A stretch of DNA of 63,706 nucleotides, counting the filler, from Octopus bimaculoides (Eukaryota): assembly GCF_001194135.2 (NCBI RefSeq). It is 7 parts of 7 records of this genome, joined end to end, with 100 filler letters (N's around TTAATTAATTAA, not from the genome) between each part and the next. Parts side by side here need not be neighbours in the genome. Positions count along the whole stretch, not along the records: positions 1 to 13,218 come from NC_068987.1; 6 more parts are not named here. One strand, given 5' to 3'. The position numbers and the translations under genes are program-made. Under the pieces are notes generated by a model. The model saw nothing but the letters and a program-made list of their open reading frames with translations, did not search any database and had not been told where the DNA came from. Positions 1 to 13,544 of this stretch are shown here, in pieces. Every line of letters begins with the position of its first letter. Positions within the stretch are counted from its first letter, which is position 1.

Positions 1-60
1 AGCAAATAATACAATGTGCCTGTAGGTTATAACACCTGGGCAATGCTGGGAGGTATTGCT

Positions 61-118
<58 letters not shown>

Positions 119-180
119 TTAGCAATGCCTCCCAGCATTGCCCAGGTGTTATAACCTACAGGCACATTGTATTATTTGCT
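1..180. repeat. Near-perfect foldback inverted repeat (61-bp arms, self-complementary microsatellite centre)
   Basis: 1-61 is the reverse complement of 120-180 with one mismatch (position 54). The spacer is a (GT)n(AT)n(CA)n run that is itself palindromic. Confidence 0.95.
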
Positions 181-1579
181 CCTTTCTTATGAGCAGCATC
201 AGCACCACTGATATATAGTTAATGGCATAATGGAAGATATTGTTTCCTGAAAAGTGAAGGGGAGGGTACAATTTGCATGGGTTTGCATGAAAGTGCTTTC
301 TGTTCTTAAGAAGGATCACAATCTATGTATTCTTTCATCGTATAAAGCGGGGTTAATACGATTTTGTCCAGAAATTACGTTTTCAAAATTTTAATTTCTC
401 CACCATCCTCACCACAATTTTTTAATTTGTAACTTTTTTAAAACTTTTTTTTTTGTTATCTATGTAGGAAAATAGAGATTACGAATCTGGGAAATATATG
501 TATATCTTTAGTTTTTGTTAAAGAAACACTCAATGACCCTTCCCCCACCTTGCTCACCCATCACCTACTCGCTTTCACTTTTGTCTGATGTTTCCCACAT
601 GCATAGAATTCTACTGAAATAGCAAACTTAAAAAATACCAGACCAGCACCAGAAAATCTGACATGCTAGAAACAACAGGTAAACAACATTATTTCTGAAG
701 AAACTTCCCAGCTTTCTAAAAGGCTGAAAGTGAAACATTGGAAGTGTGTAGCTTTTTGAAAGTGTTGAGGTGATGGGTAAAATTCTTAAAGATTCATACT
801 CTCTGTTTTTGTCAATGTATTACCAAGAAAAAGTATTTGAAAAAAGTAGAAAATTAATTTGGTGTGGAGAGGGAGAAAATTAAAATATTAAGAACGTGTT
901 TTGTGGCTGAAATCCTAATGTCTTGTATCGCAATCATAGGAATTTGAAGATATTTCTCTATATGTTATGATGAAATACAGTCACTCTCTCTCTCTCACAC
1001 ACAAAAACGATGTATGCATATGTATTTGTGGGCGAAGGTAAAGAATATGCACACCCGGTGTTTAGGATTAGGGTTATGCCCAAAACGGGTGGTGTATGTA
1101 TTCTTTGCCTCCACCTATTTATGTATATGTATATGAAAGATATGTGTGTGTGAGAGAAAGAGAGAGTGAATGACACACATACATGCAAAAAATTCATATC
1201 ACAACACACACCTTCACTCACTCACTCATTCTCTCTCTCTCTCACACACACACATGTCCATTTCACATATACGTACATTTTTCACTTTATCCTCTCTTTC
1301 AATTTCTGCTCTCTTCAAAGCATAAAGAAATTAAACTAATTTTACAGAAATTAATGAACAATCTTATGATCCCATATATGTCAAGTTGACAACTTTGCTT
1401 CTTCCAACGAAAAAATGCCATAAAATAACTTCCTTTGATACCCACACATACACACTTTAGGTAAAACTGCTGTGCGAATTATGTTATTTCTTTGCAGTGT
1501 GCATGAGCAAATTTAAAGCTCAAATCCAATTGAAATGAGCTTTTTCTATTTTGCAATTTGTGTTTGTGATGAGCATATT

Positions 1580-2330
1580 TAAAAACCTGATCTATGTTGC
1601 CAACATAGGTAAGAGCTCCTTGAATTTTCTCCCTCCTTTTCTTATTTCAGCAACAATACTTTCTGAACATCTTCCTCCACTTAGGTAACAGAAGTTATCA
1701 ACTGCCTCTAGGGAACCTCCCAGGCATTCGAGATAATCTATTTCCTATGTATTTTTACACCTTTGCTACGTATCAAGTAAGGCCATTCACATGAAGGGAG
1801 TAGACTCTTGTTTGTTTTCCAAGTTACTATAACTTTGATCTTTGCTAAGTTAACTTTAAGGCCTTTGATTCCAGGTTTTGCTTCCTCACCTGGAATTTCT
1901 TTTCTAATTCTCTTACAGATTCTTCTATGAGAATGATGTCATCAGTATATAGTAGCTATAGCAGTTCCAAAGGGAAGCCAGTCTTAAATTCCGCTGTTAT
2001 GGCTTAGATGACAATGGTAAATAGAAGGGTACCGAGAACTGAGCCTTGGAGAATTCTCACCTGTACTCTAAATTCATTGCTGTACTCATAGCTCACTTGC
2101 ACCTTACTGGTAGTATCCCAATACATGGCTTGTACAGCTTTCACAAGCCATTCATCTATCTCTAGCTAGATACGTTGTTAAAGGTTTTCTCCAGGTCAAC
2201 AAATGCCAACTACAATGGCATATTCTTAGCTAAATATTTCTGCAGTTTCTTGACTATGAAAAAGGCATAACTGATGGTAACATTCTAGGTGATAATATAT
2301 ATTGTGTGTGCATGAGAGAGAGAGAGAGAG
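1580..2330 (-). mobile_element. Decayed RTE-clade LINE reverse-transcriptase fragment
   Basis: Minus-strand translation around 1925-2060 gives ILQGSVLGTLLFTIV...FKTGFPLELL...YTDDIILIEES, resembling the RT QGSVLSP and YADD motifs, with stops and frameshifts. Confidence 0.6.
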
Positions 2331-3108
2331 ATTTTCATAATCTTTCTCTATATTTTGGTGTACAAGAAACCTTGGTGAAGAGAAATAGATGTCACACATG
2401 ACATCAGAAACATGTATTGTAATAAATTGGCATTTAAGGCCCCACATCTATTTAATTATCTTCCAAAAAGGCTATGAGAGTCCACGCGAGTAAAATAGGA
2501 ATCAAAAGGGTCCATAGGTAAAAAATGGTTGAAAGCCACTGTTATAGACCATGTTATGCTATATTGAAGTCTATCTTCTTTTAGACCAGGTTGGAAGAAC
2601 TTGTTTAAAAAGCCACCTGATGCAAGATAATTAACTGCACATCTCACCTATGAGCTACAGGTGTGAGAATGACTCAAGAAAACTGTAGTGGTTTTGAATA
2701 AAGAATCATTTTATGTCTTTAATCTATTTGATATGATAAAACTTCATCATATCTAATCATTCATATAATTCACTGAGCTTTCAGTCATATATGACTTAAG
2801 AAATCCATCGAACATTTGAACTTGTATTACTGACTATAATGTGAAACTTATTGAATAATGGAATTTGCATGAACATTTTATCTTGAACATTCAATCTCTC
2901 CTAAACTTTTTTTGTTTTTATTTACCTGTGAAAAACCAAAAAAAATTGCCAAGATCTGTTACAAAATTTTAAAGCAACCACACATTCTAAGACTCAAATG
3001 CATTTTCAACCCCCAAAACAAACCCAAATACAAACACACACACACACATATATATATACACACACACACATATATATATATACATACACACACACACATA
3101 TATATGTG

Positions 3109-3149
<41 letters not shown>

Positions 3150-3177
3150 GTGTGTGTGTGTGTATAAATATATATAT

Positions 3178-3320
3178 CATCATCATTTAACATCTGCCTT
3201 CCATACTGGGATGGCTTGGATGGTTTGACAGGAGCCAGCCAGGTAGAAGACTACACAAGTCTTCTGTCTGTTTTGGCATGGGTTTTACAGCTAGATGCCC
3301 TTTCTAACACCAACCACCCA
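3178..3320 (-). mobile_element. 3' end remnant of an RTE-related LINE/SINE
   Basis: CATCATCATTTAACATCTGCCTTCCAT...GATGCCC matches the element end seen at 8855 and, more diverged, at about 6030. Confidence 0.6.
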
Positions 3321-4199
3321 GCAGATTTTACATATCAGTATCTATCTATCTTTCCATGTATAAATATATACATACACATTGCACACTCTCTTAGCCCCAT
3401 ACACTACACAGCTACAAAGGAGATTCTAAGTGGCCAGTGGGTCTGCTAAAAGTAGCAGCTAAGTTGCTTTTGAATCAAACCCTACAGAATTAAACAATTA
3501 AAATAACATATGAGATAATGTAGTCCTTCATACCTTTAAAAAGATGGATATGTATTTGAACATTTGATCCCTTGATCATTATGTGTGTTTGAAGTAACTT
3601 TGCTTTCTTTGTCTTCCAATTTTCATCAGAAATAGTTTTTTCTATTTACAGCACAATCATAACTTTTCTTACACAGAGTGTTTAGGGTCACATTAGGGTC
3701 CAATATATCGCTTCTGATTAAACTTAATATTTCAATTTCTTTCAAAATTTAAAATATATTATGAGTTTTATTTAAGTTTTTCTTTTAAGTCGCTTCATGT
3801 CCAAACACCATAAAGCATTTTCATAACTTCTTTTCTTTTCAATATGGCTATTCTATGGTTCAGTCTCCCTTACTCTGAACTACTTTGAGTTTATGTGTAC
3901 ACACACTAGTTATAAGTTCAAACCAGCCAGATCTGTCCTCTCACACCTACCCTAGAATGTTATTCTAAAAATAAACAATCACATAAAAATCTCAACCAAT
4001 TCAAAATAATGTAAGCAAATAAGCATTACATTTGACAGAGTTATCTATATGTTACGACGAGTTACGAGAATATAAAGGCTTTGTTTGTGCTGTTCATCAG
4101 TAATAATGATTCCATATTATATCACGTATTTTTATCCAAAATTATAGGGAAGATAACTTAGCAAAGTTAAGAGTACATAATAGCCATGAGCAGACATTG

Positions 4200-4620
4200 A
4201 AGATTGTAGGGAATCTAATAGTTTTGTGCTGTTCAGGAGTATTGCTGATTCAGTATTGTTGTTCAGACTGAGTACCTGCAATATAGTATTGCTAAGCAAG
4301 ATTATGATTTCAAGTCATTAGAAGCATAGGATGATTTAAGATTTCTAACCATGGAATATAAGCTAATCTGTGGGCAAGAGGTGAAGTAATATCTAGATAA
4401 GTTAGATGAAGAAAGTTAGGGTAGAGTGTAAGGTGATGACATCTCAGGGTGTAATTAGAAGTTAAATTAGGAAGAAATGAGGATACTATAGGAGAGATAA
4501 TTGAGCCTTGAAGTACATCCCAGTTTTTTGAGTGAAGAACAGCCTAACAGGCACATTTCAATCCAGGTGAGATAAAGAAGTTCAGATATCTCCCACACAG
4601 ATAAAGGCTTTACTAAAGAG
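4200..4620 (-). mobile_element. Highly decayed LINE RT remnant (CR1/L2/Jockey-like)
   Basis: Minus strand near 4480-4535 reads DVLQGSIISPI, resembling RT GVPQGSIISP. No open frame remains. Confidence 0.4.
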
Positions 4621-4703
4621 TAGCTGTACTTCTACTGGAAACTAACTATGCTTCTATACTGAGTTAGAATTAAAAGTTAATTTATAAATAAAAATATAAC
4701 AAC

Positions 4704-4709
4704 TTTATT
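4704..4709 (-). terminator. Candidate polyadenylation signal AATAAA directly after the stop codon of the transposase-derived gene
   Basis: Minus strand reads GTT TAA AATAAA GTTG (stop 4712-4710, AATAAA 4709-4704). Confidence 0.45.
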
Positions 4710-4996
4710 TTAAACTTTATACAAATGTTTGATACAGTAAATTAGAGCGGCAAATTTATCATTATTTGTAAAGTGAGACCTCCACATAAATTCTGTTAAA
4801 AATGATTGAAATAAGAATGTCTTATGCTTTCTTTGAAAATGTTTTTTTACTCTCTGCCACATTCTGTCTATATTTCTGGTGTGGATTTCTGTATCTTCTG
4901 GATCATTGTAATCTACATATTCATGAGTATATATACCTTGTTGGATCTGGTCAATTTGAAGAGGTTCAGTCCAAATATCAGACACAATATGGGTAC
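4710..4996 (-). CDS. Coding exon 2 (C-terminal 95 aa) of a Merlin/IS1595 (ISXO2-like) transposase-derived protein
   Basis: Acceptor TTCTTTTTCTTATAG|GTACCCAT (AG at 4998-4997). Reads (G)THIVSDIWTE...YTHEYV...IHTRNIDRMW...FLTEFMWR...ALIYCIKHLYKV*, matching the ISXO2-type SDxW, HTxNIExxW and YLxEFxWR motifs. Confidence 0.88.
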
Positions 4997-6899
4997 CTAT
5001 AAGAAAAAGAACTGCAATGTATCTTTATAATCATAGATTATAAGGTTACAATAATGAGACTGTGATCTATTTTCTTAGAGCACAAAAATGACAAACTGAT
5101 GATGAAGATTCAAATCTTGGTCATGAATTCTGCTTGTTAAACACTAACCACTTCACAAAAAATGGGTAAAAAAATATTAAAATATGTATGACTAAAATGA
5201 AGTGTTTATAAATGTGAGTATAGCAAACTGGTTCAATATTTTAAAAAGGGTGTTGTATAGCCAATCAGACTTCATTTTAACCATTTCTCTTAAACTGGCT
5301 GTCATTCATTCTATTTGTTGTCTCTTCAAGACCTCAATTAGAATAGTTAAATTTAGGGCATTCTATACAAGGAATTAGATGTCTATTTTTAATTTATAAG
5401 TACTAATGCTTAGACAATGCTGTGATATGATTGCATAAGAGTGATATTTGACTCTGTAAAAGTTTGTTGTATTATGTCATGTTCAATATTTAATAAAATG
5501 TTGTTTCATGAATCTATTCTCAAAAGTGTTCCAGATGTGACCATCATGTTCTTTTGTAAATCAGTGTACTATGGATTATTTTTTAAACAGTGAGTTGTGA
5601 TATGATAGACATTAGGTTGTTATTTCTTGCAGGTCAAATGACCATATAGGAATTCTCTCTTTGTCACATCTTATAAACTAGTTCAAATGCAGGTGAAAAA
5701 AAAAAAATGGGATTATCAGAGCTGGAATACCATTAATTACATGTCTGCTTCAACAGATGTAACCGGGAGCTAAACAACAACCTGACTTTGCATTTACTGC
5801 ATTTGTTGTTGCCATTCATTTTCAACTAACAATTCTTTCAGAATGATTGAAGTCATGTTATTATGAGATGATAATATAATATTAACATCTTGTTAATAAT
5901 AAGACATAAATCCCTTACTTGAAAACAGGTAAGTGTTAGCTGCAGAAAGGGCATCCCACAATAAAACATTCAATACGTAACTGTCAACCCAAGCTAGCAT
6001 GGAAAAATGGGTGTAAAATGATTGAACCATCATCATCATTTAATGTCCATTTTCCATGCTGCCAATGGTTTGGACAATTTAACAGAATCCAATGAGCTGC
6101 AGGGCTGCATCAAGCTCCAATGTCAGTTCTAGTATGATTTCTATAGCTTGATGCCCTTCTTAATGCCAATGACTTTACAAAGTGTACTAGGTGCTTTTTC
6201 CATGGTGCTGGCACTAATGAGGTCACCAAGTAACTTACAAGACAAAGAAAAAAGAAAGAGATGCCTCAAATGAGTGAGAATGTATTTGAGAGAGAAGGAG
6301 GTGGCTTTATGCCAAGTATTGAAAGGCTAAAATATCATAGAGGGACAAGCACAGGTGTCTCACTAGAGATGGGGGTAAAGATGGTGGTGATGAGGTGCCA
6401 GAGCATATTTTCAAGCCACAAGAAGGTGAGAACAGGAGAGAATACAGATTAAAGTATACTACAAAAATGAATTCTTCAAAAAGGAATAACTGAATAATGG
6501 TAGGCTCTGTTCTAAAACACATACACATGTACAAACAACATAAAGCAAAAACAAATTTCATTACTAGGTATCTGAAAATATAATTTTTCTGATAAGATTA
6601 TCTAAAGATAACTTCAGGTTGAGAGCCATTCTTGTGAGTAGGTAGACTGATTCTGTCACATGGTTTAACACAAACACCCAGTCCATAGGTACCGTTAGTA
6701 GATTCCACCATTTTGGACATTTGGGCCAGGACATCAGATTGAGGATGGTGAAAGGAACTTATTCCATTCCTCTTACCAAACTCAAACAGTCTATAAAAAG
6801 TTTAAGGCACAACTCTTACTCCTGTGACTAAGCCATAAAAGAATAAAATGAATAAACATACCTAACAATTAATCTACTGTTGCATGCAAGTTGTATATG

Positions 6900-7365
6900 T
6901 ATGATATGAATGTGTGATTAAGAAGTTCAGTTCCCAACTGTACAGTTTCAACCTCAGACCCACTGTGTGACACCTTGAGCAAGTGTCTTCTACCATCGTC
7001 CCAGGCTGATCAAAGCTTGGGACCGTAGAAGACGAAAACTGAAAGAAGGCCTTCACATATATGTATTTGAGTATGTGTGTGTGTTTGAGTTGGTTATGTC
7101 GCCCTGTTTTTAAAATCATGCAATAGTTGTAAATGAGTATATCTGTCATACAAGTGATGCTGTTCATTTCCAGTCTTCTGTAAAAAGAAAACAAAAAATA
7201 AAACATGCCTGGCCATGGGAAATATCACCTTCCTTGGAAACATCTGAGGGTTGGCAACGAGTAAGGCATCCAGCTGTAGAAAAAAAAAAATTACCTCAAC
7301 AAATTCCAGGCAAATATGGAAGAGTAGATGTCAATATGAAAACACAAATGATGAACTCCATCGAG
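6900..7365 (+). mobile_element. Diverged SINE, family A-related head with an RTE-like tail
   Basis: Contains the CACCTTGAGCAAGTGTCTTCTAC core shared with other copies and ends with GGCATCCAGCTGTAGAAA...ATGATGA. Confidence 0.6.
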
Positions 7366-7839
7366 CTGAGATATATAGTCTTAAAAATCATATTAACAAA
7401 CCTCTCAGATGTTAAGACATTTGATTAGCTGTAGCTGTCTGGTGCTCATTGGAAACAATTTTGGTTAGCAAAACAACCTTTGTTTTAAAAGCACTATTTC
7501 AAAAACATCTGGGTAATAATTTACCTTTTATTCTAAACAATCTGGTTTCAGAAATGTCTGCTTTCTTTTTCTTGCAGACATGTCACAAAAATGTGTATTC
7601 CAGATGAAACTGTATTTTTTGACATCTAATTAGAATAACTTATAAATGAAGTAAAGACTACATTACTTTAGCTAATGTTATTTTAATGCTTTTAACAGGT
7701 AAGGAACAGAGGGTGTTTCTGTTTCATTGGACCTCCCCAGTGAAGCATAGACATGTCTTTATACATTTATTAATGACCGATGACAATATTAAAAAAACAG
7801 AAACATATATGATTCACAAAAAAATTTTTCTAAATATAA

Positions 7840-7995
7840 ATACATGGCTGTATGGAAAGAAGTTTGCAACCCAATCACATGGTTCCATTTTCAGTTTCAC
7901 TGCATAGCACCTTGGGTAACTGTCATCTACTATAGCGTTGGGCCTACCAAAGACTTGTGAGTGGATTTGGCAAACGGAAACTGAAAAAAGCCCAT
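7840..7995 (+). mobile_element. SINE family A 5' fragment
   Basis: CATGGCTGTATGG...CACCTTGGGTAACTGTC...GTGAGTGGATTTGG...GGAAACTGAAA matches the copies at 26558 and 28335. Confidence 0.7.
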
Positions 7996-8854
7996 GTATC
8001 CAGGGATATCTATTTCCTCATTCTACGACTGCCTGCCAAGATGGTATGTTAATTTCTTTGCTCGTAGCCCAATTTCTGTTGTGCTTGTTATTTTTCCAGT
8101 GATTAGTGGTTTTCTTAGAGGATTTTATGACTCTGATTTTCATAACATTGCAGGCACCGAATATGCCCTATTATAATTATATAATTTTGGATTTGCCATT
8201 TATTAGCTTTTGCTTGTTGGCCACCTATGTTATTGTTGTTATTCATTTTACCAATGATAATAATTAATACTAATATCTATATAAATATTTTTGAATGTTT
8301 ATTCATTATATATATATATATATATACATATATATATAATCTGAGGCAACTCCAGGTCATTAGTGTCACTCAGGCTCATCACAGATTTCACATAAAACGC
8401 CTGTATAAAAGAAGGTAAGAGACACAATGCACACCACATACTTCTAAGTGCACTGATAATTTAACAATAAGACAGAAATGTAGTTGAAAACATTGAATTT
8501 GAATTATTTTTAATTTTTACGATCATAGATAACAACTCAGGCTGTAACATCTGAGCCCAAGTCAGGAGCGTGTGAACGATGTCAAGAGAATGTCTGCTAT
8601 GAATGATATCTTTTGACACAGGACACCTCTAAGACGACCACCAGACACCGAATGAAAATAAATGAAACACAACCAGGCTCAATAAAAGGAACCCGAGTTA
8701 TTGGCTGTAATTACATACTTGGAGTCAGTGTTGGCAGAAATTAAATCAGCTTGCAAATACACGTTCACTTTACAAAATTTATACTTGGGCTAAACCTGAA
8801 CAGCTTGAGTGCCAGAGTCGCTACTGATATATATATACACACACACACACACAC

Positions 8855-9246
8855 ATCATCATCATCGTTTAACGTCCGCTTTCCATGTTTGCATCGGTTG
8901 GACGATTTGACTGAGGACTGGTGAAACCAGATGGCTACACCAGGCTCCAATCTGATTTGGCAGAGTTTCTACGGCTGGATGCCCTTCCTAACGCCAACCA
9001 CTCAGAGAGTGTAGTGGGTGCTTTTACGTGTCACCCGCACGAAGGCCAGTCAGGCGGTACTGGCAACGGCCACGCTCAAGATGGTGTATTTTATGTGCCA
9101 CCTGCACAAGAGCCAGTCTAGGGGCACTGGCAACGATCTCGCTCAAAAATCCTACGAAGGCCAGTCAGGTGGTACTGGCAACGGCCACGCTCAAAATGGT
9201 GTATTTTATGTGCCACCCGCACAAGAGCCAGTCCAGGGACACTGGC
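8855..9246 (-). mobile_element. 3' UTR of an RTE-clade LINE with an internal ~115-bp tandem duplication
   Basis: Begins CATCATCATCGTTTAACGTCCG. It is similar, in reverse complement, to the 3' UTR following the RTE ORF near 40140-40212. Direct repeat 9039-9131 / 9154-9246. Confidence 0.7.
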
Positions 9247-9251
9247 CAGTC

Positions 9252-9286
<35 letters not shown>

Positions 9287-9288
<2 letters not shown>

Positions 9289-10119
9289 GCAGGCTGTTGT
9301 GAATGGATTGTCATCTAAATTACGCAAAAATGAAAATAACACTGACATCTCATTTGTTTACCAAAATTATATAGAGATATTTTTAAATACTAAAGAGTAA
9401 ATTTATTCAGTAAAATTGCTTCCAGGCAACCTCTGAATCTCCAGCAACTCTTCTGAACAGTCTCCTTGTTTAAGTTGTTGAATGCTGGCATAGTCCTTGC
9501 TGCCTTTAGTTCATCTTTGGTGCTACAAGGAGTTTTGTTGATCTCTTGCTCAACACACATAATAATCAAGGGGGCTGCAGTATGGGGAGTTAGGTGAGCA
9601 GAGGTTACAGGTGATGTGGTCGCAGAAATTGCCTGACAGCCATGACTGGATTCTCCTGCTTGTGTGGCATAGTGCAGAGTCCTGTTGCTAGACAAAGGGT
9701 CCTCCAGCAGCCACCCTCTTGACCCATGGCGGCACTACCTCCTCCAGACACTTGATGTAGGCCTCTATGTTGAATCTGAAGTCATGTGGGAAGATGGAGT
9801 CATAACGTCACCACCACTAGCGATCACTCCAAACACCATGATGTTGACTGGACGTTTGATTTTTATCACTTTCATTACATGTCCTCAGATTGACACCCAA
9901 ACACTCTGAAATGTTCATATTGGAGCTTCTGGTGCGAATGCCAAATAGTACAGTATGTCGTTTCCAAGTTTCTAGCAGAGTGAATTGTGTCATGGTGCTG
10001 TTTTTCTCACAGACGGTGCCCAACTGACCCTACTATATACTGTGTAGTCGCCAAAATCAAAAACAATGCACGAAATTAAAAATACAAAAATGGCAACAAT
10101 TTGCACATCCCACCCTGTA
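9287..10119 (-). mobile_element. Internally deleted Tc1/mariner-superfamily DNA transposon
   Basis: Left end TA|CAGGGTGGGATGTGCAAATTG at 10119. The ORF remnant ...VEQEINKTPCSTKDELKA...LNKETVQKSCWRFRGCLEA resembles a Tc1/mariner C-terminus after a degenerate WPPxSPDxNP motif. Confidence 0.65.
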
Positions 10120-10372
10120 TATGTGTGTGTGTGTGTGTCCCACCACCGTTTGATAACCAGTGTTGATGTGTTTATGTTTCTGTAACTTAGAGGTTCGACA
10201 AAAGATATCGACAGAATAAGTATAAGGCTTTAAAAAAAAAAGTTCTGGAGTCGATTCATTCGACAAAACATTCTTCAAGGCAGTGTTCCAGTAACTATTG
10301 ATAGAAGGTTAATTTCTTCAATTTCTTTGAAATGTGATTTTGCTATTTTGGATTCCTCACAAGACATAAGTG

Positions 10373-10750
10373 CAGGCATGGCTGTGTGGCTAAGAAACTC
10401 ATTGCAATCACATGGTTTCGAGTTCAGTATCACTGCACAGTACTTTGGACAAACATTTTCAATTATAGCCTTGGACAGACCACTGCCCTGTGAGTGAATC
10501 TGGTGGACAAAAACTGTATGTAAGCTAGTCATATATGTGTGTTTGTTTCTCCACCAAGCCGCTTGACAACTGTGTTGGTTTATTTACGTCCTCTTAACTT
10601 AACTGGTCGGCGAAAAGAGACCTATAGAATCAGTACTAGATTATAAAAAAAAAAAACGATGTACTGGGTCGATTTGTTCGACTAAACTCTTCAAAGAAGT
10701 GCCCCAGTACGGCCGCAGTCCAATGAATGAAACAAGTAAAAGATAAAAAA
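10373..10750 (+). mobile_element. SINE family A, diverged full-length copy
   Basis: Head GCAGGCATGGCTGTGTGG and tail GGCCGCAGTCCAATGAATGAAACAAGTAAAAGATAAAA, collinear with the 26558 copy. Confidence 0.75.
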
Positions 10751-11344
10751 ACTGACACTTCAAGTTGAAATGTCCGGTTAATTTCCTCTGTTATGGAGCT
10801 GCTATCGACCGAAGCTAAGAGTATATTTCTTTCTTTATTAGCTAACATATCGCTGGTAGAAAGATCCTCCACAAGTGCTTATTATTGTTTCGACTACAGT
10901 AAATATAATTTAAAATTTGGTAATAAACGAAACATTCAGTCGCAACTCTGTCAGTGATTTCTGACAACTGAGAGCGAGGGGCATATTAAGAAATGTCACT
11001 AAAAGCCAAAATGGAATAAATAAATAAATAAACAAGTGAGAAAATAGGTTGTCTCAAGTCCCCTGGTGGGCGGGGCTGTGAGGATGGAAAAGCGTGTGAA
11101 CAAATCGTCATGTTTAATACAATTATGTTATTTCTACTGTACGTTTAGCGTTTTGAATCTGCCCAACAACAGAGCGAAGTAAATAAATTTTATTGTTTCA
11201 AACACTATTCTGTCTTAGTTAATTAATAGAAAATGGGGGGGGGGGTGATTTCACAGATATTTTGAAGGAGTCTGGTAAGCACCTGTTGAAATATCATGAA
11301 GGCAGCAAAGATAAAAGAAAACCGCAGATTATATCTATCCATAC

Positions 11345-12041
11345 CTGGTAAAATCCATCGGATAATTGCAGCTTCGAAAGCGTCTTTATTTTGATGCTCA
11401 ATAGGCACCAGAAAACATTTGTCAGTTCCACGTTCAATTCCACCAAAAACACAGAATCTTTTCATATGCTTCTTTTCATTGGGTGTAGGTTTGAAATGTG
11501 TGGTCACATCTATTTCAACAACTTTTGGTTCACCTGACTGTAAATCGAACCCGCCAATCTCGGGTGGGTAGGCACCTAATTCAGTCGGGTGGTCTTCCAG
11601 GAACCGTTCTAGTAGTTCTCGGATGAGACAAAACAGATCAATTGTTGATTTCTTACTTACGGTAGTCTCATGGGCTATCTCAGAATGGAAATATTCCCTT
11701 GACCACATGTACATAAGCCATATGAATGTTGTCAGCGACAGGCGGCTATTCTCGAAAAACGATCCTTTGCGGATTGATCTACAGTAGTTATGCTTTGGGC
11801 ATCTCCATCGTTTTCCATCTATACCCTTCTGGTAACCGTTAACTGTACACGGGTTCCCGCAAGTGGGACACACAACAGAATTGCTTATAAGTTCATATTT
11901 CGCCAGCCATGTAATTGCTTTTTCATTCGTAGAAGTTTGTTGAAAGAGATCACAAAATGTCCAGGTCTCTTGCTTAATTTTTTCGTCATCAATAATGTCT
12001 GTGCATATTATTTTGGGGCTTGGTTGTCTTCTCCGTGGCAT
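11345..12041 (-). CDS. Coding exon 1 (aa 1-233) of a Merlin/IS1595 (ISXO2-like) transposase-derived protein
   Basis: Intact ORF from ATG 12041. Zinc-ribbon-like CPTC...DGKRWRCPKH, then SIRKGSFFENSRL, VVEID, VFGGIERGTDKCFLVPI and IRWILPG, all typical of the DDE_Tnp_IS1595 family. Homology stops exactly at the GT donor. Confidence 0.9.
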
Positions 12042-12098: not shown

Positions 12099-12142
12099 TT
12101 TATACGAAACTAATACTCTGAAAAGTGTTAGTTTCGTATAAA
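12099..12142. repeat. 18-bp-arm hairpin upstream of the transposase-derived ATG
   Basis: TTTATACGAAACTAATAC (12099-12116) pairs with GTGTTAGTTTCGTATAAA (12125-12142), with one mismatch. Confidence 0.85.
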
Positions 12143-12659: not shown

Positions 12660-12930
12660 AGCTTTTAGTACAAAGTTACGTCCCTTTAAATTACACACTG
12701 TAAAAGAACATAATTTCCAGGTAGAGATGCACATGCACTGCGACAAGTTCGTACACGGTTTTCGTCGGTGAGATTTGACAAGCAGAGCATAGGTCTGTCC
12801 GAGGTACACAAGAAGATGCTTGCTCACGAGAGCTCGTAGAACGATCAAAGCTAGAAGTATGTCGGTGCGATGTGAATTTCTGGCACTATCACGCTATTAG
12901 ATGTCAGAAGTGAAAGTAGTCGCTGTCTGT
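12660..12930. promoter_or_regulatory. CpG-enriched segment, candidate promoter or 5' non-coding exon of the transposase-derived gene
   Basis: Locally CpG-rich unique sequence 0.6-0.9 kb upstream of an acceptor-like TAG|CATA-ATG (AG at 12047-12046). No transcript evidence is available. Confidence 0.3.
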
Positions 12931-13544
12931 CTGCCTGTCTGCCTGCATGCCTGTTGCTGGTCTGTCAGCCTGCTTGCCTGTCTGCCTGCATGCCTGCTGC
13001 TGGCCTGTCTGCCTGCTTGCCTGCTGAGCTATCTGTCTGTCTGTCTGCTGGTTTGAGTTGATACTTTGGCTTACTTACTTACTGATATCTATCTACTATG
13101 TATCTATCTATCAATTATTAGAAAACACAAATTTAATATAAAAACATTTTCCTGAAATTGCAAATTATTTAAAATATAAAAATATAATTTTCAACAGAGA
13201 GAATTTATCAAAATAGAANNNNNNNNNNNNNNNNNNNNNNNNNNNNNNNNNNNNNNNNNNNNTTAATTAATTAANNNNNNNNNNNNNNNNNNNNNNNNNN
13301 NNNNNNNNNNNNNNNNNNTATATATATATAAATATATATATATGCATATATGTATATATGTATATGTACATATGTATATGTATATATGCATCTGTATATA
13401 TGTATGTGTATATATGTATATATGTATATGTATATGTATATATGTACATATGTATATATATGTGTGTATATGTATATCTATTTATGTATATATAGATGTG
13501 TAGATATATATATATATATAGATGTATTAAAAAATATGTACACT

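What the first reader, a model, noticed from the sequence alone, without database searches (positions are those of the whole stretch)
4710..12041. Candidate domesticated Merlin/IS1595 transposase: an intact spliced gene split by a 6.3-kb intron
The ORF track shows two apparently unrelated minus-strand ORFs. Seen: exon 12041-11345 ends ...WILP-G|GTATGG and exon 4996-4710 begins TTCTTTTTCTTATAG|GT-ACC-CAT-ATT-GTG-TCT-GAT. Splicing gives 984 nt (327 aa plus stop) and rebuilds the motif IRWILPGTHIVSDIW exactly. Established: these motifs define the ISXO2-like DDE_Tnp_IS1595 domain carried by eukaryotic Merlin transposons. Inference: every other transposon ORF here is broken while this one is intact, has a host-sized intron and no visible TIRs. 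That pattern points to a host gene exapted from a Merlin transposase, and I know of no named cephalopod gene of this kind.
Basis: partly seen in the sequence, partly recalled or inferred. Interest (0 to 1): 0.92.

Follow-up and report, generated by a model that had tools for sequence, protein, structure and literature searches.

The report
Octopus gene derived from Merlin transposase
The two minus-strand ORFs are the two exons of a real, already annotated but uncharacterised Octopus bimaculoides gene (LOC106879047) that descends from a Merlin/IS1595 "jumping gene" enzyme; the host has kept it at a fixed place under purifying selection, as one of an eight-gene octopus family.

Summary
Exon 1 (12041-11345) and exon 2 (4996-4710) on the minus strand join across a 6,348-nt GT..AG phase-1 intron into a 327-aa ORF. 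That ORF is 100% identical to RefSeq XP_014783955.1 (O. bimaculoides LOC106879047, "uncharacterized").

The protein matches Pfam DDE_Tnp_IS1595 above its cut-off.

The domestication reading passes every test I could run:
- The O. sinensis orthologue lies in the same gene order, with the same splice sites and an alignable intron.
- dN/dS between the two species is 0.14 (p = 1e-5).
- No terminal inverted repeats flank the gene.

It is not a single-copy gene. O. bimaculoides has at least 8 paralogues (63-79% identical), in two tandem triplets plus two singles, and all share the intron site. The catalytic E is D throughout the family. Three paralogue lineages have lost a catalytic residue; the two I tested still evolve at dN/dS 0.11-0.22. 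The selected function is therefore probably not transposition.

Not shown:
- any biochemical function;
- presence outside the genus Octopus.

I found no paper on these genes. Verdict: a new member of a known kind (domesticated transposase), of moderate interest.

The parts
11345..12041 (-). Exon 1 (CDS, 697 nt, aa 1-232 plus the first base of Gly233). Encodes the N-terminal helices, a CxxC...CxxH zinc ribbon, a helical region, and the first half of the RNase H-like domain including D178.
   Evidence: The AF2 model gives pLDDT of about 90 for aa 10-150.
4997..11344 (-). Intron: 6,348 nt, GT..AG, phase 1. It holds dispersed-repeat fragments and microsatellites and no Pfam-recognisable ORF.
   Evidence: Collinear with the 9,336-nt O. 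sinensis intron at 86-94% identity. The intron site is shared by all paralogues.
4710..4996 (-). Exon 2 (CDS, 287 nt, aa 233-327 plus stop TAA at 4712-4710). Encodes the second half of the RNase H-like domain and the invariant C-terminal tail.
11781..11870 (-). Zinc-ribbon coding segment (aa 58-87: C58, C61, C81, H84).
   Evidence: C58, C61 and C81 are invariant in alignments A1 and A2. Three short strands lie at 66-69, 77-80 and 87-89 in the model. PF13408 gives only a faint zinc-ribbon hit.
11508..11510 (-). Codon GAT = D178, the first catalytic Asp ('VEIDVT'; canonical relatives have 'VEIDES').
   Evidence: It lies on strand 174-182 of the model.
4977..4979 (-). Codon GAT = D239, the second catalytic Asp ('VSDIW'; canonical 'SDGW').
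   Evidence: It follows strand 235-238 of the model.
4866..4868 (-). Codon GAC = D276, at the position of the catalytic Glu of canonical Merlin ('NIENxW' becomes 'NIDRMW').
   Evidence: It lies on helix 272-289 of the model.
4704..4709 (-). AATAAA polyadenylation-signal hexamer directly after the stop codon.
   Evidence: The hexamer is conserved next to the stop in all six aligned orthologues and paralogues. Its use is inferred.
12099..12142 (-). Perfect 15-nt inverted repeat with a 14-nt spacer (TTTATACGAAACTAA...TTAGTTTCGTATAAA), 58-101 nt upstream of the ATG. It is either a candidate 5'-UTR hairpin or a palindromic protein-binding site.
   Evidence: The RNA fold is -23.3 kcal/mol with z = -7.35. 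O. sinensis keeps it with one mismatch; it is degenerate upstream of paralogue LOC106879049. Function unknown.

Best explanation
The window is Octopus bimaculoides chromosome CM046607.1, about 56,329,217-56,342,434. The two ORFs are the two coding exons of LOC106879047, a host gene descended from a Merlin/IS1595 DDE transposase. It sits at a fixed locus: head-to-head with paralogue LOC106879048, and head-to-tail with paralogue LOC106879049 followed by a DHHC gene. It has no transposon ends and carries a large intron that pre-dates the expansion of the family. [quoted passage not shown] All of this is shown.

The following is inferred. The 327-aa protein acts through its well-conserved N-terminal zinc-ribbon and helical region as a DNA-binding protein. 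The RNase H-like domain serves as a structural or interaction module rather than to move DNA. The likely role is sequence-specific binding that regulates host genes, or restrains the Merlin elements that are abundant in octopus genomes. The main basis is that sister paralogues which lost a catalytic Asp are just as constrained. This particular copy keeps D178, D239 and D276 (D in place of E), so residual nuclease activity is not excluded.
For: - Identity and locus: window 1-8071 equals L001 8071-1 at 100%. The spliced product is 100% identical to XP_014783955.1.
- Homology: PF12762 matches at 40.2 bits. The model has an RNase H-like strand and helix order, and Foldseek best matches are retroviral integrase catalytic cores, TM up to 0.66 over about 140 residues.
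- Orthology and synteny: O. sinensis has the same order (48 divergent, then 47, 49, DHHC), identical splice-site sequences and a collinear, alignable intron.
- Selection on this gene: dN 0.010, dS 0.074, dN/dS 0.14, binomial p = 1.1e-5. Intron mismatch divergence is about 4-8%.
- Selection on paralogues with a lost catalytic residue: LOC106879048 (D1 to G) has dN/dS 0.11, p = 1.6e-8. LOC106879382 (D2 to G) has 13 synonymous and 12 non-synonymous differences, dN/dS about 0.22, counted by hand.
- No TIRs flank the gene. Homology between paralogues fades gradually in both flanks.
- Copy number: each 90% cluster holds 1-2 contigs per species.
- Distinctness: among 1.84 billion representatives the family collapses to one entry, and the next hit is 38% identical. 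All 40-48% partial hits are canonical DDE Merlin.
Against: - No transcript evidence was obtainable.
- No spliced Logan-derived fragment appears in the protein clusters; all Logan members read through into the intron, so they look genomic.
- Only three closely related Octopus species could be compared, and the selection test for this gene rests on 22 substitutions.
- The paralogue LOC106879049 is disrupted in O. sinensis, so individual members are dispensable.
- D-D-D triads are active in other transposase superfamilies (my own knowledge), so 'non-catalytic' is not proven for this copy.
- No DNA target, partner or phenotype is known.
Confidence: 0.75

Rival explanations
1. Domesticated, but still an enzyme. 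LOC106879047 keeps a D-D-D triad and works as a nuclease or recombinase on host DNA or on Merlin elements, possibly with the catalytically dead paralogues as partners.
For: D178, D239 and D276 are all acidic and sit on the expected strand, loop and helix of the model. Five of the eight paralogue lineages keep all three acidic residues. The whole RNase H-like domain is strongly conserved within the family.
Against: The residue after D1 changes from E to V. The near-invariant Tyr of 'W.AY' is Pro in this gene. Four residues are deleted between D2 and the third acidic residue. Paralogues lacking D1 or D2 are equally constrained. No TIR-bearing substrate of this family was seen.
Confidence: 0.2
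2. Not domesticated: a low-copy, intron-bearing autonomous Merlin transposon family that is still mobile or was until recently.
For: O. bimaculoides carries many Merlin-like annotated proteins (191 per PMC8101967). Merlin insertions classed as recent are reported in O. vulgaris (PMC13282606). dN/dS of about 0.2 between paralogues would also fit an active transposon lineage.
Against: Orthologous position, neighbours and intron are conserved between species. dN/dS is 0.11-0.22 at orthologous loci, where a resident transposon copy should drift neutrally. No TIRs were found. Introns of 3-9 kb with species-specific lengths are unlike a mobile unit. Catalytic residues are lost in conserved copies.
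Confidence: 0.04
3. A decaying relic whose open frame has survived by chance and that gene predictors merely pick up.
For: No transcript evidence was obtained here. The neighbour LOC106879049 has decayed in O. sinensis.
Against: The 327-codon frame is intact in three species. There is a significant deficit of non-synonymous change. Pooling four family genes by hand gives 76 synonymous against 51 non-synonymous differences, where about 101 non-synonymous are expected if neutral.
Confidence: 0.02

Closest known systems
Canonical eukaryotic Merlin transposases (IS1595-related DDE transposases), e.g. the intronless 314-332-aa proteins P0011-P0016 and P0044-P0053
   Same: The PF12762 domain, an overall length of about 320-330 aa, an N-terminal CxxC...CxxC/H zinc ribbon, the RNase H-like order of secondary structure, and the first two catalytic Asp.
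   Different: At most 39% identity over the full length. The octopus family has 'DVT' for 'DES', 'SDIW' for 'SDGW', D for the catalytic E, a 4-aa deletion before 'DP', and a 6-7-aa insertion ('ELGAYPP'). It also has a phase-1 intron after 'WILP', no TIRs, and fixed syntenic loci. P0011's gene is a single uninterrupted ORF.
Merlin-derived ORFs proposed as domesticated in Stentor and Perkinsela (PMC8101967)
   Same: Conserved Merlin-type ORFs without TIRs or TSDs; for Stentor, conserved neighbouring genes between species.
   Different: Those are protists, and the passages I read argue from ORF preservation; I did not check whether selection was measured. Here it is an animal multigene family with a shared intron, measured dN/dS, and catalytic-residue loss in some members. 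That paper lists O. bimaculoides only as rich in Merlin-like proteins.
Other domesticated DDE transposase genes and families (my own knowledge, not tested here): pogo-derived CENP-B, PGBD genes, SETMAR, and PiggyMac with its catalytically dead PgmL paralogues
   Same: A transposase-derived host gene at a fixed locus, without transposon ends, under purifying selection. As in the PiggyMac family, paralogues with and without intact catalytic residues coexist.
   Different: A different superfamily (Merlin/IS1595). No function, partner or DNA target is known, and the family was seen only in the genus Octopus.

Membership tests
Merlin/IS1595 transposase protein superfamily (homology) | DDE_Tnp_IS1595 domain (PF12762) above Pfam's gathering score | tested here: met
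   40.2 bits against a cut-off of 27, E = 4.5e-10, aa 191-306.
Merlin/IS1595 transposase protein superfamily (homology) | RNase H-like catalytic fold | tested here: met
   The AF2 model (pLDDT 76) shows the order b1-b2-b3-a-b4-b5-a. Foldseek best matches are integrase catalytic cores (E about 1e-3 to 1e-2, TM up to 0.66 on the target) and IstA. Confidence is moderate.
Merlin/IS1595 transposase protein superfamily (homology) | Canonical D-D-E catalytic triad | tested here: not met
   D178 and D239 are present. The third position is D276, not E, in this gene and in most of the family. It is N or S in the LOC106868237 lineage. D1 is G in LOC106879048 and D2 is G in LOC106879382.
   No match at E <= 1. 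A zinc ribbon is nevertheless evident from invariant Cys residues and from the model. PMC8101967 states that described Merlin elements lack this Pfam domain.
Merlin transposon (mobile element) | Terminal inverted repeats (5'-GG...) flanking the transposase gene | tested here: not met
   No inverted-repeat pair has one arm upstream of 12041 and the other downstream of 4710. The upstream palindrome at 12099-12142 has no partner at the 3' end.
Merlin transposon (mobile element) | 8-9-bp target-site duplications | not testable with these tools
   With no TIRs there are no element ends to inspect.
Merlin transposon (mobile element) | Several dispersed, near-identical copies | tested here: not met
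   At the protein level only: each 90% cluster holds 1-2 contigs per species, and the closest paralogue is 79% identical and adjacent. No whole-genome nucleotide search was possible.
Domesticated (exapted) transposase gene | Orthologues at the syntenic position in diverged species | tested here: met
   O. bimaculoides and O. sinensis have the same neighbours (LOC106879048 orthologue divergent; LOC106879049 orthologue and a DHHC gene downstream) and a collinear intron.
Domesticated (exapted) transposase gene | Intact reading frame and dN/dS well below 1 between orthologues | tested here: met
   The frame is 327 codons in three species. dN/dS is 0.14, p = 1.1e-5.
Domesticated (exapted) transposase gene | Transcription and correct splicing | not testable with these tools
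The only evidence is RefSeq models, including isoforms that use the same donor.
Domesticated (exapted) transposase gene | A demonstrated host function | not testable with these tools
   No paper mentions these loci.

The most novel reading that the evidence does not exclude
The eight-gene octopus family works as one trans-acting DNA-processing system. Members with an intact acidic triad, such as LOC106879047, would cut DNA, and the catalytically dead paralogues (LOC106879048, LOC106879382, LOC106868237) would act as obligatory partners. This is analogous to PiggyMac and its PgmL partners in ciliates. The system would carry out programmed cleavage or rearrangement, or targeted silencing of Merlin elements, in octopus cells.
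Probability: 0.06. Interest if true: 0.85.

Novelty: new member of a known kind. Interest (0 to 1): 0.5.

Why it matters
Domesticated transposases are a recurring source of new regulators and DNA-processing enzymes. To my knowledge, and in the literature searched here, no Merlin-derived host gene has been characterised in an animal. Here the candidate is a whole lineage-restricted family with conserved synteny, a shared intron and measurable constraint. Some of its members have lost catalytic residues naturally. That gives a ready comparison for asking what a Merlin transposase fold is retained for. It also adds a transposon-derived gene family to the list of octopus-specific genomic novelties. 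The practical point for annotation is that these 'ISXO2-like transposase' models should not be masked as repeats.

Tried and rejected
- Exact look-ups of P0001, P0002 and P0006 found no contig, so the O. vulgaris orthologous locus of this gene was not read. Only its LOC106879048 neighbour was.
- A sequence search of the PDB with the family profile gave only chance-level hits.
- Rfam and tRNA scans of the window found nothing.
- A TIR search around the nearest canonical relative (L009) found nothing convincing, so the ancestral element's ends are unknown.
- The script machine was lost. As a result, dN/dS for LOC106879382 was counted by hand, its flanks were not compared between species, and no phylogeny or codon-model test was run.
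- Literature searches for the locus names, for 'ISXO2-like' with octopus, and for the Logan run id returned nothing.
- I considered the upstream palindrome as a relic TIR and rejected it: both arms lie on the same side of the gene and there is no 3' partner.
Full report
**1. What is in the sequence**

On the minus strand an ATG at 12041 opens a frame that runs to ...ATT TTA CCA G, followed by GTATGG at 11344. After TTCTTTTTCTTATAG, the bases from 4996 continue GT ACC CAT ATT GTG TCT GAT... to a TAA at 4712-4710. Joining 12041-11345 (697 nt) to 4996-4710 (287 nt) gives 984 nt, that is 327 codons plus stop with no internal stop. The intron is 6,348 nt, GT..AG, phase 1.

**2. Where it comes from and what it is called**

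- Window 1-8071 is 100% identical to the reverse of locus L001, from Octopus bimaculoides chromosome CM046607.1. This places the window at about 56,329,217-56,342,434 of that record.
- The spliced protein is 327/327 identical to RefSeq XP_014783955.1, 'uncharacterized protein LOC106879047 isoform X1'. UniProt A0A0L8G6I6 names it 'ISXO2-like transposase domain-containing protein'.
- The gene model is therefore already public. What is not public, as far as six literature searches show, is any analysis of it.

**3. Homology**

- Pfam DDE_Tnp_IS1595 (PF12762) matches aa 191-306 at 40.2 bits against a cut-off of 27. PF12760 does not match.
- A family-profile search of PDB sequences finds nothing.
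- An AlphaFold2 model built on 17 sequences has mean pLDDT 76 and about 90 for aa 10-150. It shows an N-terminal helical region, a three-stranded zinc ribbon and further helices. These are followed by the strand and helix order of an RNase H-like domain.
- Foldseek's best PDB matches are retroviral integrase catalytic cores and the IstA transposase, at modest scores.
- The acidic residues fall where expected: D178 on the first strand, D239 after the fourth, D276 on the following helix.

**4. It is one of a family**

Homology search and cluster look-up show eight O. bimaculoides genes:

| Genes | Location |
|---|---|
| LOC106879047, LOC106879048, LOC106879049 | this locus |
| LOC106868236, LOC106868237, LOC106868238 | three same-strand tandem genes on CM046614.1 |
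| LOC106877799 | elsewhere (locus not fetched) |
| LOC106879382 | elsewhere (CM046617.1) |

- Seven of the eight have orthologues more than 90% identical in O. vulgaris and/or O. sinensis. LOC106879049 has no intact orthologue there; its O. sinensis counterpart is disrupted (section 8).
- Paralogues are 63-79% identical to the window protein.
- LOC106879048 lies head-to-head with the window gene, 8.5 kb from its ATG. LOC106879049 lies 6.6 kb downstream on the same strand, followed by a convergent DHHC gene.
- An exhaustive HMMER scan of 1.84 billion representatives collapses the family into one entry. The next hit is only 38% identical. The partial hits at 40-48% are all canonical Merlin.

**5. 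Family signature**

Relative to canonical, intronless Merlin proteins (P0011-P0016, P0044-P0053), the octopus proteins differ as follows:

| Feature | Canonical Merlin | Octopus family |
|---|---|---|
| After the first Asp | VEIDES | VEIDVT |
| Second Asp motif | SDGW | SDIW |
| Third catalytic residue | NIENxW | NIDRMW (Glu becomes Asp) |
| Before 'DP' | present | four residues missing |
| Before 'EIGG' | absent | six or seven residues inserted |

- Three lineages have gone further. LOC106879048 has G for the first Asp, LOC106879382 has G for the second, and LOC106868237 has N or S at the third position.
- The window gene also replaces the near-invariant Tyr of 'W.AY' with Pro, in all three species.

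**6. Intron**

- The donor motif W-(I/V)-L-P-G|GTATG is present at all 14 family gene copies in the fetched loci, and in a Logan contig from a further sample.
- Exact exon models confirm the same phase-1 site in LOC106879047, 48, 49 and 382, with intron lengths from 3.3 to 9.3 kb.
- P0011, one of the nearest canonical relatives, is encoded by a single uninterrupted ORF. The other near relatives (P0012-P0016) are full-length proteins from metagenome assemblies and are probably intronless too.
- The intron therefore pre-dates the family's expansion and is not a feature of its closest known transposon relatives.

**7. Orthology and selection**

In O. sinensis (L002) the orthologue has identical splice-site sequences, a 9,336-nt intron collinear with the window's at 86-94% identity, and the same downstream neighbours. 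The LOC106879048 orthologue is again divergent upstream. The two lineages split about 34 My ago (PMC10700109).

| Gene, O. bimaculoides vs O. sinensis | Syn. | Non-syn. | dS | dN | dN/dS | p |
|---|---|---|---|---|---|---|
| LOC106879047 (this gene) | 14 | 8 | 0.074 | 0.010 | 0.14 | 1.1e-5 |
| LOC106879048 (first Asp lost) | 21 | 10 | 0.111 | 0.013 | 0.11 | 1.6e-8 |
| LOC106879382 (second Asp lost), counted by hand | 13 | 12 | about 0.07 | about 0.015 | about 0.22 | about 1e-4 (approx.) |

- Intron mismatch divergence for this gene is about 4-8%.
- A transposon copy sitting at an orthologous site should drift neutrally; these genes do not.
- Between paralogues, dS is 0.5 (47 vs 49) and about 1.2 (47 vs 48), with dN/dS about 0.2. 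The duplications are therefore much older than the species split.

**8. Not a mobile element**

- No inverted repeats bracket the gene.
- Homology between paralogues extends about 100 nt upstream and about 240 nt downstream and then fades without a sharp edge.
- Protein clusters hold one or two contigs per species.
- One member shows birth-and-death. The O. sinensis counterpart of LOC106879049 has a 1-bp deletion and two CGA-to-TGA stops.

**9. What it most likely does**

Shown: a Merlin-derived gene, fixed in place, intron-bearing, without transposon ends and under selection.

Inferred: the selected activity does not need the catalytic triad, because members that lost it are equally constrained. 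The best-modelled part of the protein is the N-terminal zinc-ribbon and helical region, which is also well conserved. I therefore favour a sequence-specific DNA-binding role, with the RNase H-like domain kept as a structural or interaction module. Plausible targets are host regulatory sites or the ends of the Merlin elements that are numerous in octopus (191 annotated proteins, PMC8101967; recent insertions, PMC13282606). Because this copy keeps three acidic residues, a residual nuclease role remains a live rival.

**10. Limits**

- No RNA reads could be examined.
- All Logan-derived cluster members read through the donor into the intron, so they look genomic. Transcription and splicing therefore rest on RefSeq models and on conservation.
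- Only one genus is represented.
- The script machine failed, which prevented a phylogeny, codon-model tests and further synteny checks.

Noticed in passing
L002 24816-25523 and 30171-30457 (O. sinensis CM016865.1): The O. sinensis counterpart of LOC106879049 is disrupted by a 1-bp deletion near codon 14 and two CGA-to-TGA stops, while the O. bimaculoides gene is intact. dN/dS across the pair is still 0.17, so the decay looks recent, or some of it is assembly error.
   Followed up: partly
L002 10001-30457; proteins P0002 and P0006: RefSeq merges the O. sinensis 47 and 49 loci into one 30-kb gene (LOC115214512). Isoform X4 joins exon 1 of the 47 orthologue to exon 2 of the disrupted 49 copy and ends at its premature stop. 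Isoform X3 uses the same donor with unrelated downstream exons.
   Followed up: partly
window 12099-12142: A perfect 15-nt inverted repeat with a 14-nt spacer lies 58-101 nt upstream of the ATG. It folds at -23.3 kcal/mol (z = -7.35) if transcribed. O. sinensis keeps it with one mismatch, it is degenerate upstream of LOC106879049, and it is absent upstream of LOC106879048.
   Followed up: partly
window 8853-9147 (tandem 115-nt unit at 9039-9246) and 7845-7993: Two short dispersed repeats lie inside the intron. The 8.85-9.15-kb element has copies at L001 17875-18049 and at three places in L002. The roughly 150-nt element at 7845-7993 matches at least six places in L002, on both strands. They look like SINE-type repeats but were not classified.
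   Followed up: no
window 12923-13047; 3034-3149; 8307-8338: There is a CTGC/CTGCCTGT-rich microsatellite about 0.9 kb upstream of the gene, and (CA)n(TA)n microsatellites in the intergenic region and the intron.
   Followed up: no
protein P0024 (O. vulgaris CAI9735743.1, 386 aa): An O. vulgaris model fuses the first ~276 residues of the LOC106877799-type paralogue to a run of C2H2 zinc fingers. It is either an annotation read-through into a neighbouring ZNF gene or a real host-transposase fusion isoform.
   Followed up: no
L007 (O. sinensis CM016865.1, 89.7 Mb) and L008 (O. bimaculoides CM046617.1, 19.0 Mb): The LOC106879382 orthologue lies on the same O. sinensis chromosome record as the 47/48 cluster. 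In O. bimaculoides it lies on a different chromosome record from that cluster. This is either a rearrangement or a scaffolding difference.
   Followed up: no
L006 (Logan SRR11869391 contig, 1,040 nt); proteins P0010, P0027, P0028, P0043: Short assembled contigs from other sequencing runs carry exon 1 of family members that differ from all three annotated species (P0010 is only about 65% identical to any of them). They read through the same donor site, which points to further octopod species or paralogues. The organisms could not be identified.
   Followed up: partly
window 9390-9695 (minus strand): A 101-aa ORF inside the intron has a tail that looks to me like the end of a mariner-type transposase. 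Pfam gives no match at E <= 0.1, so this stays an impression.
   Followed up: partly
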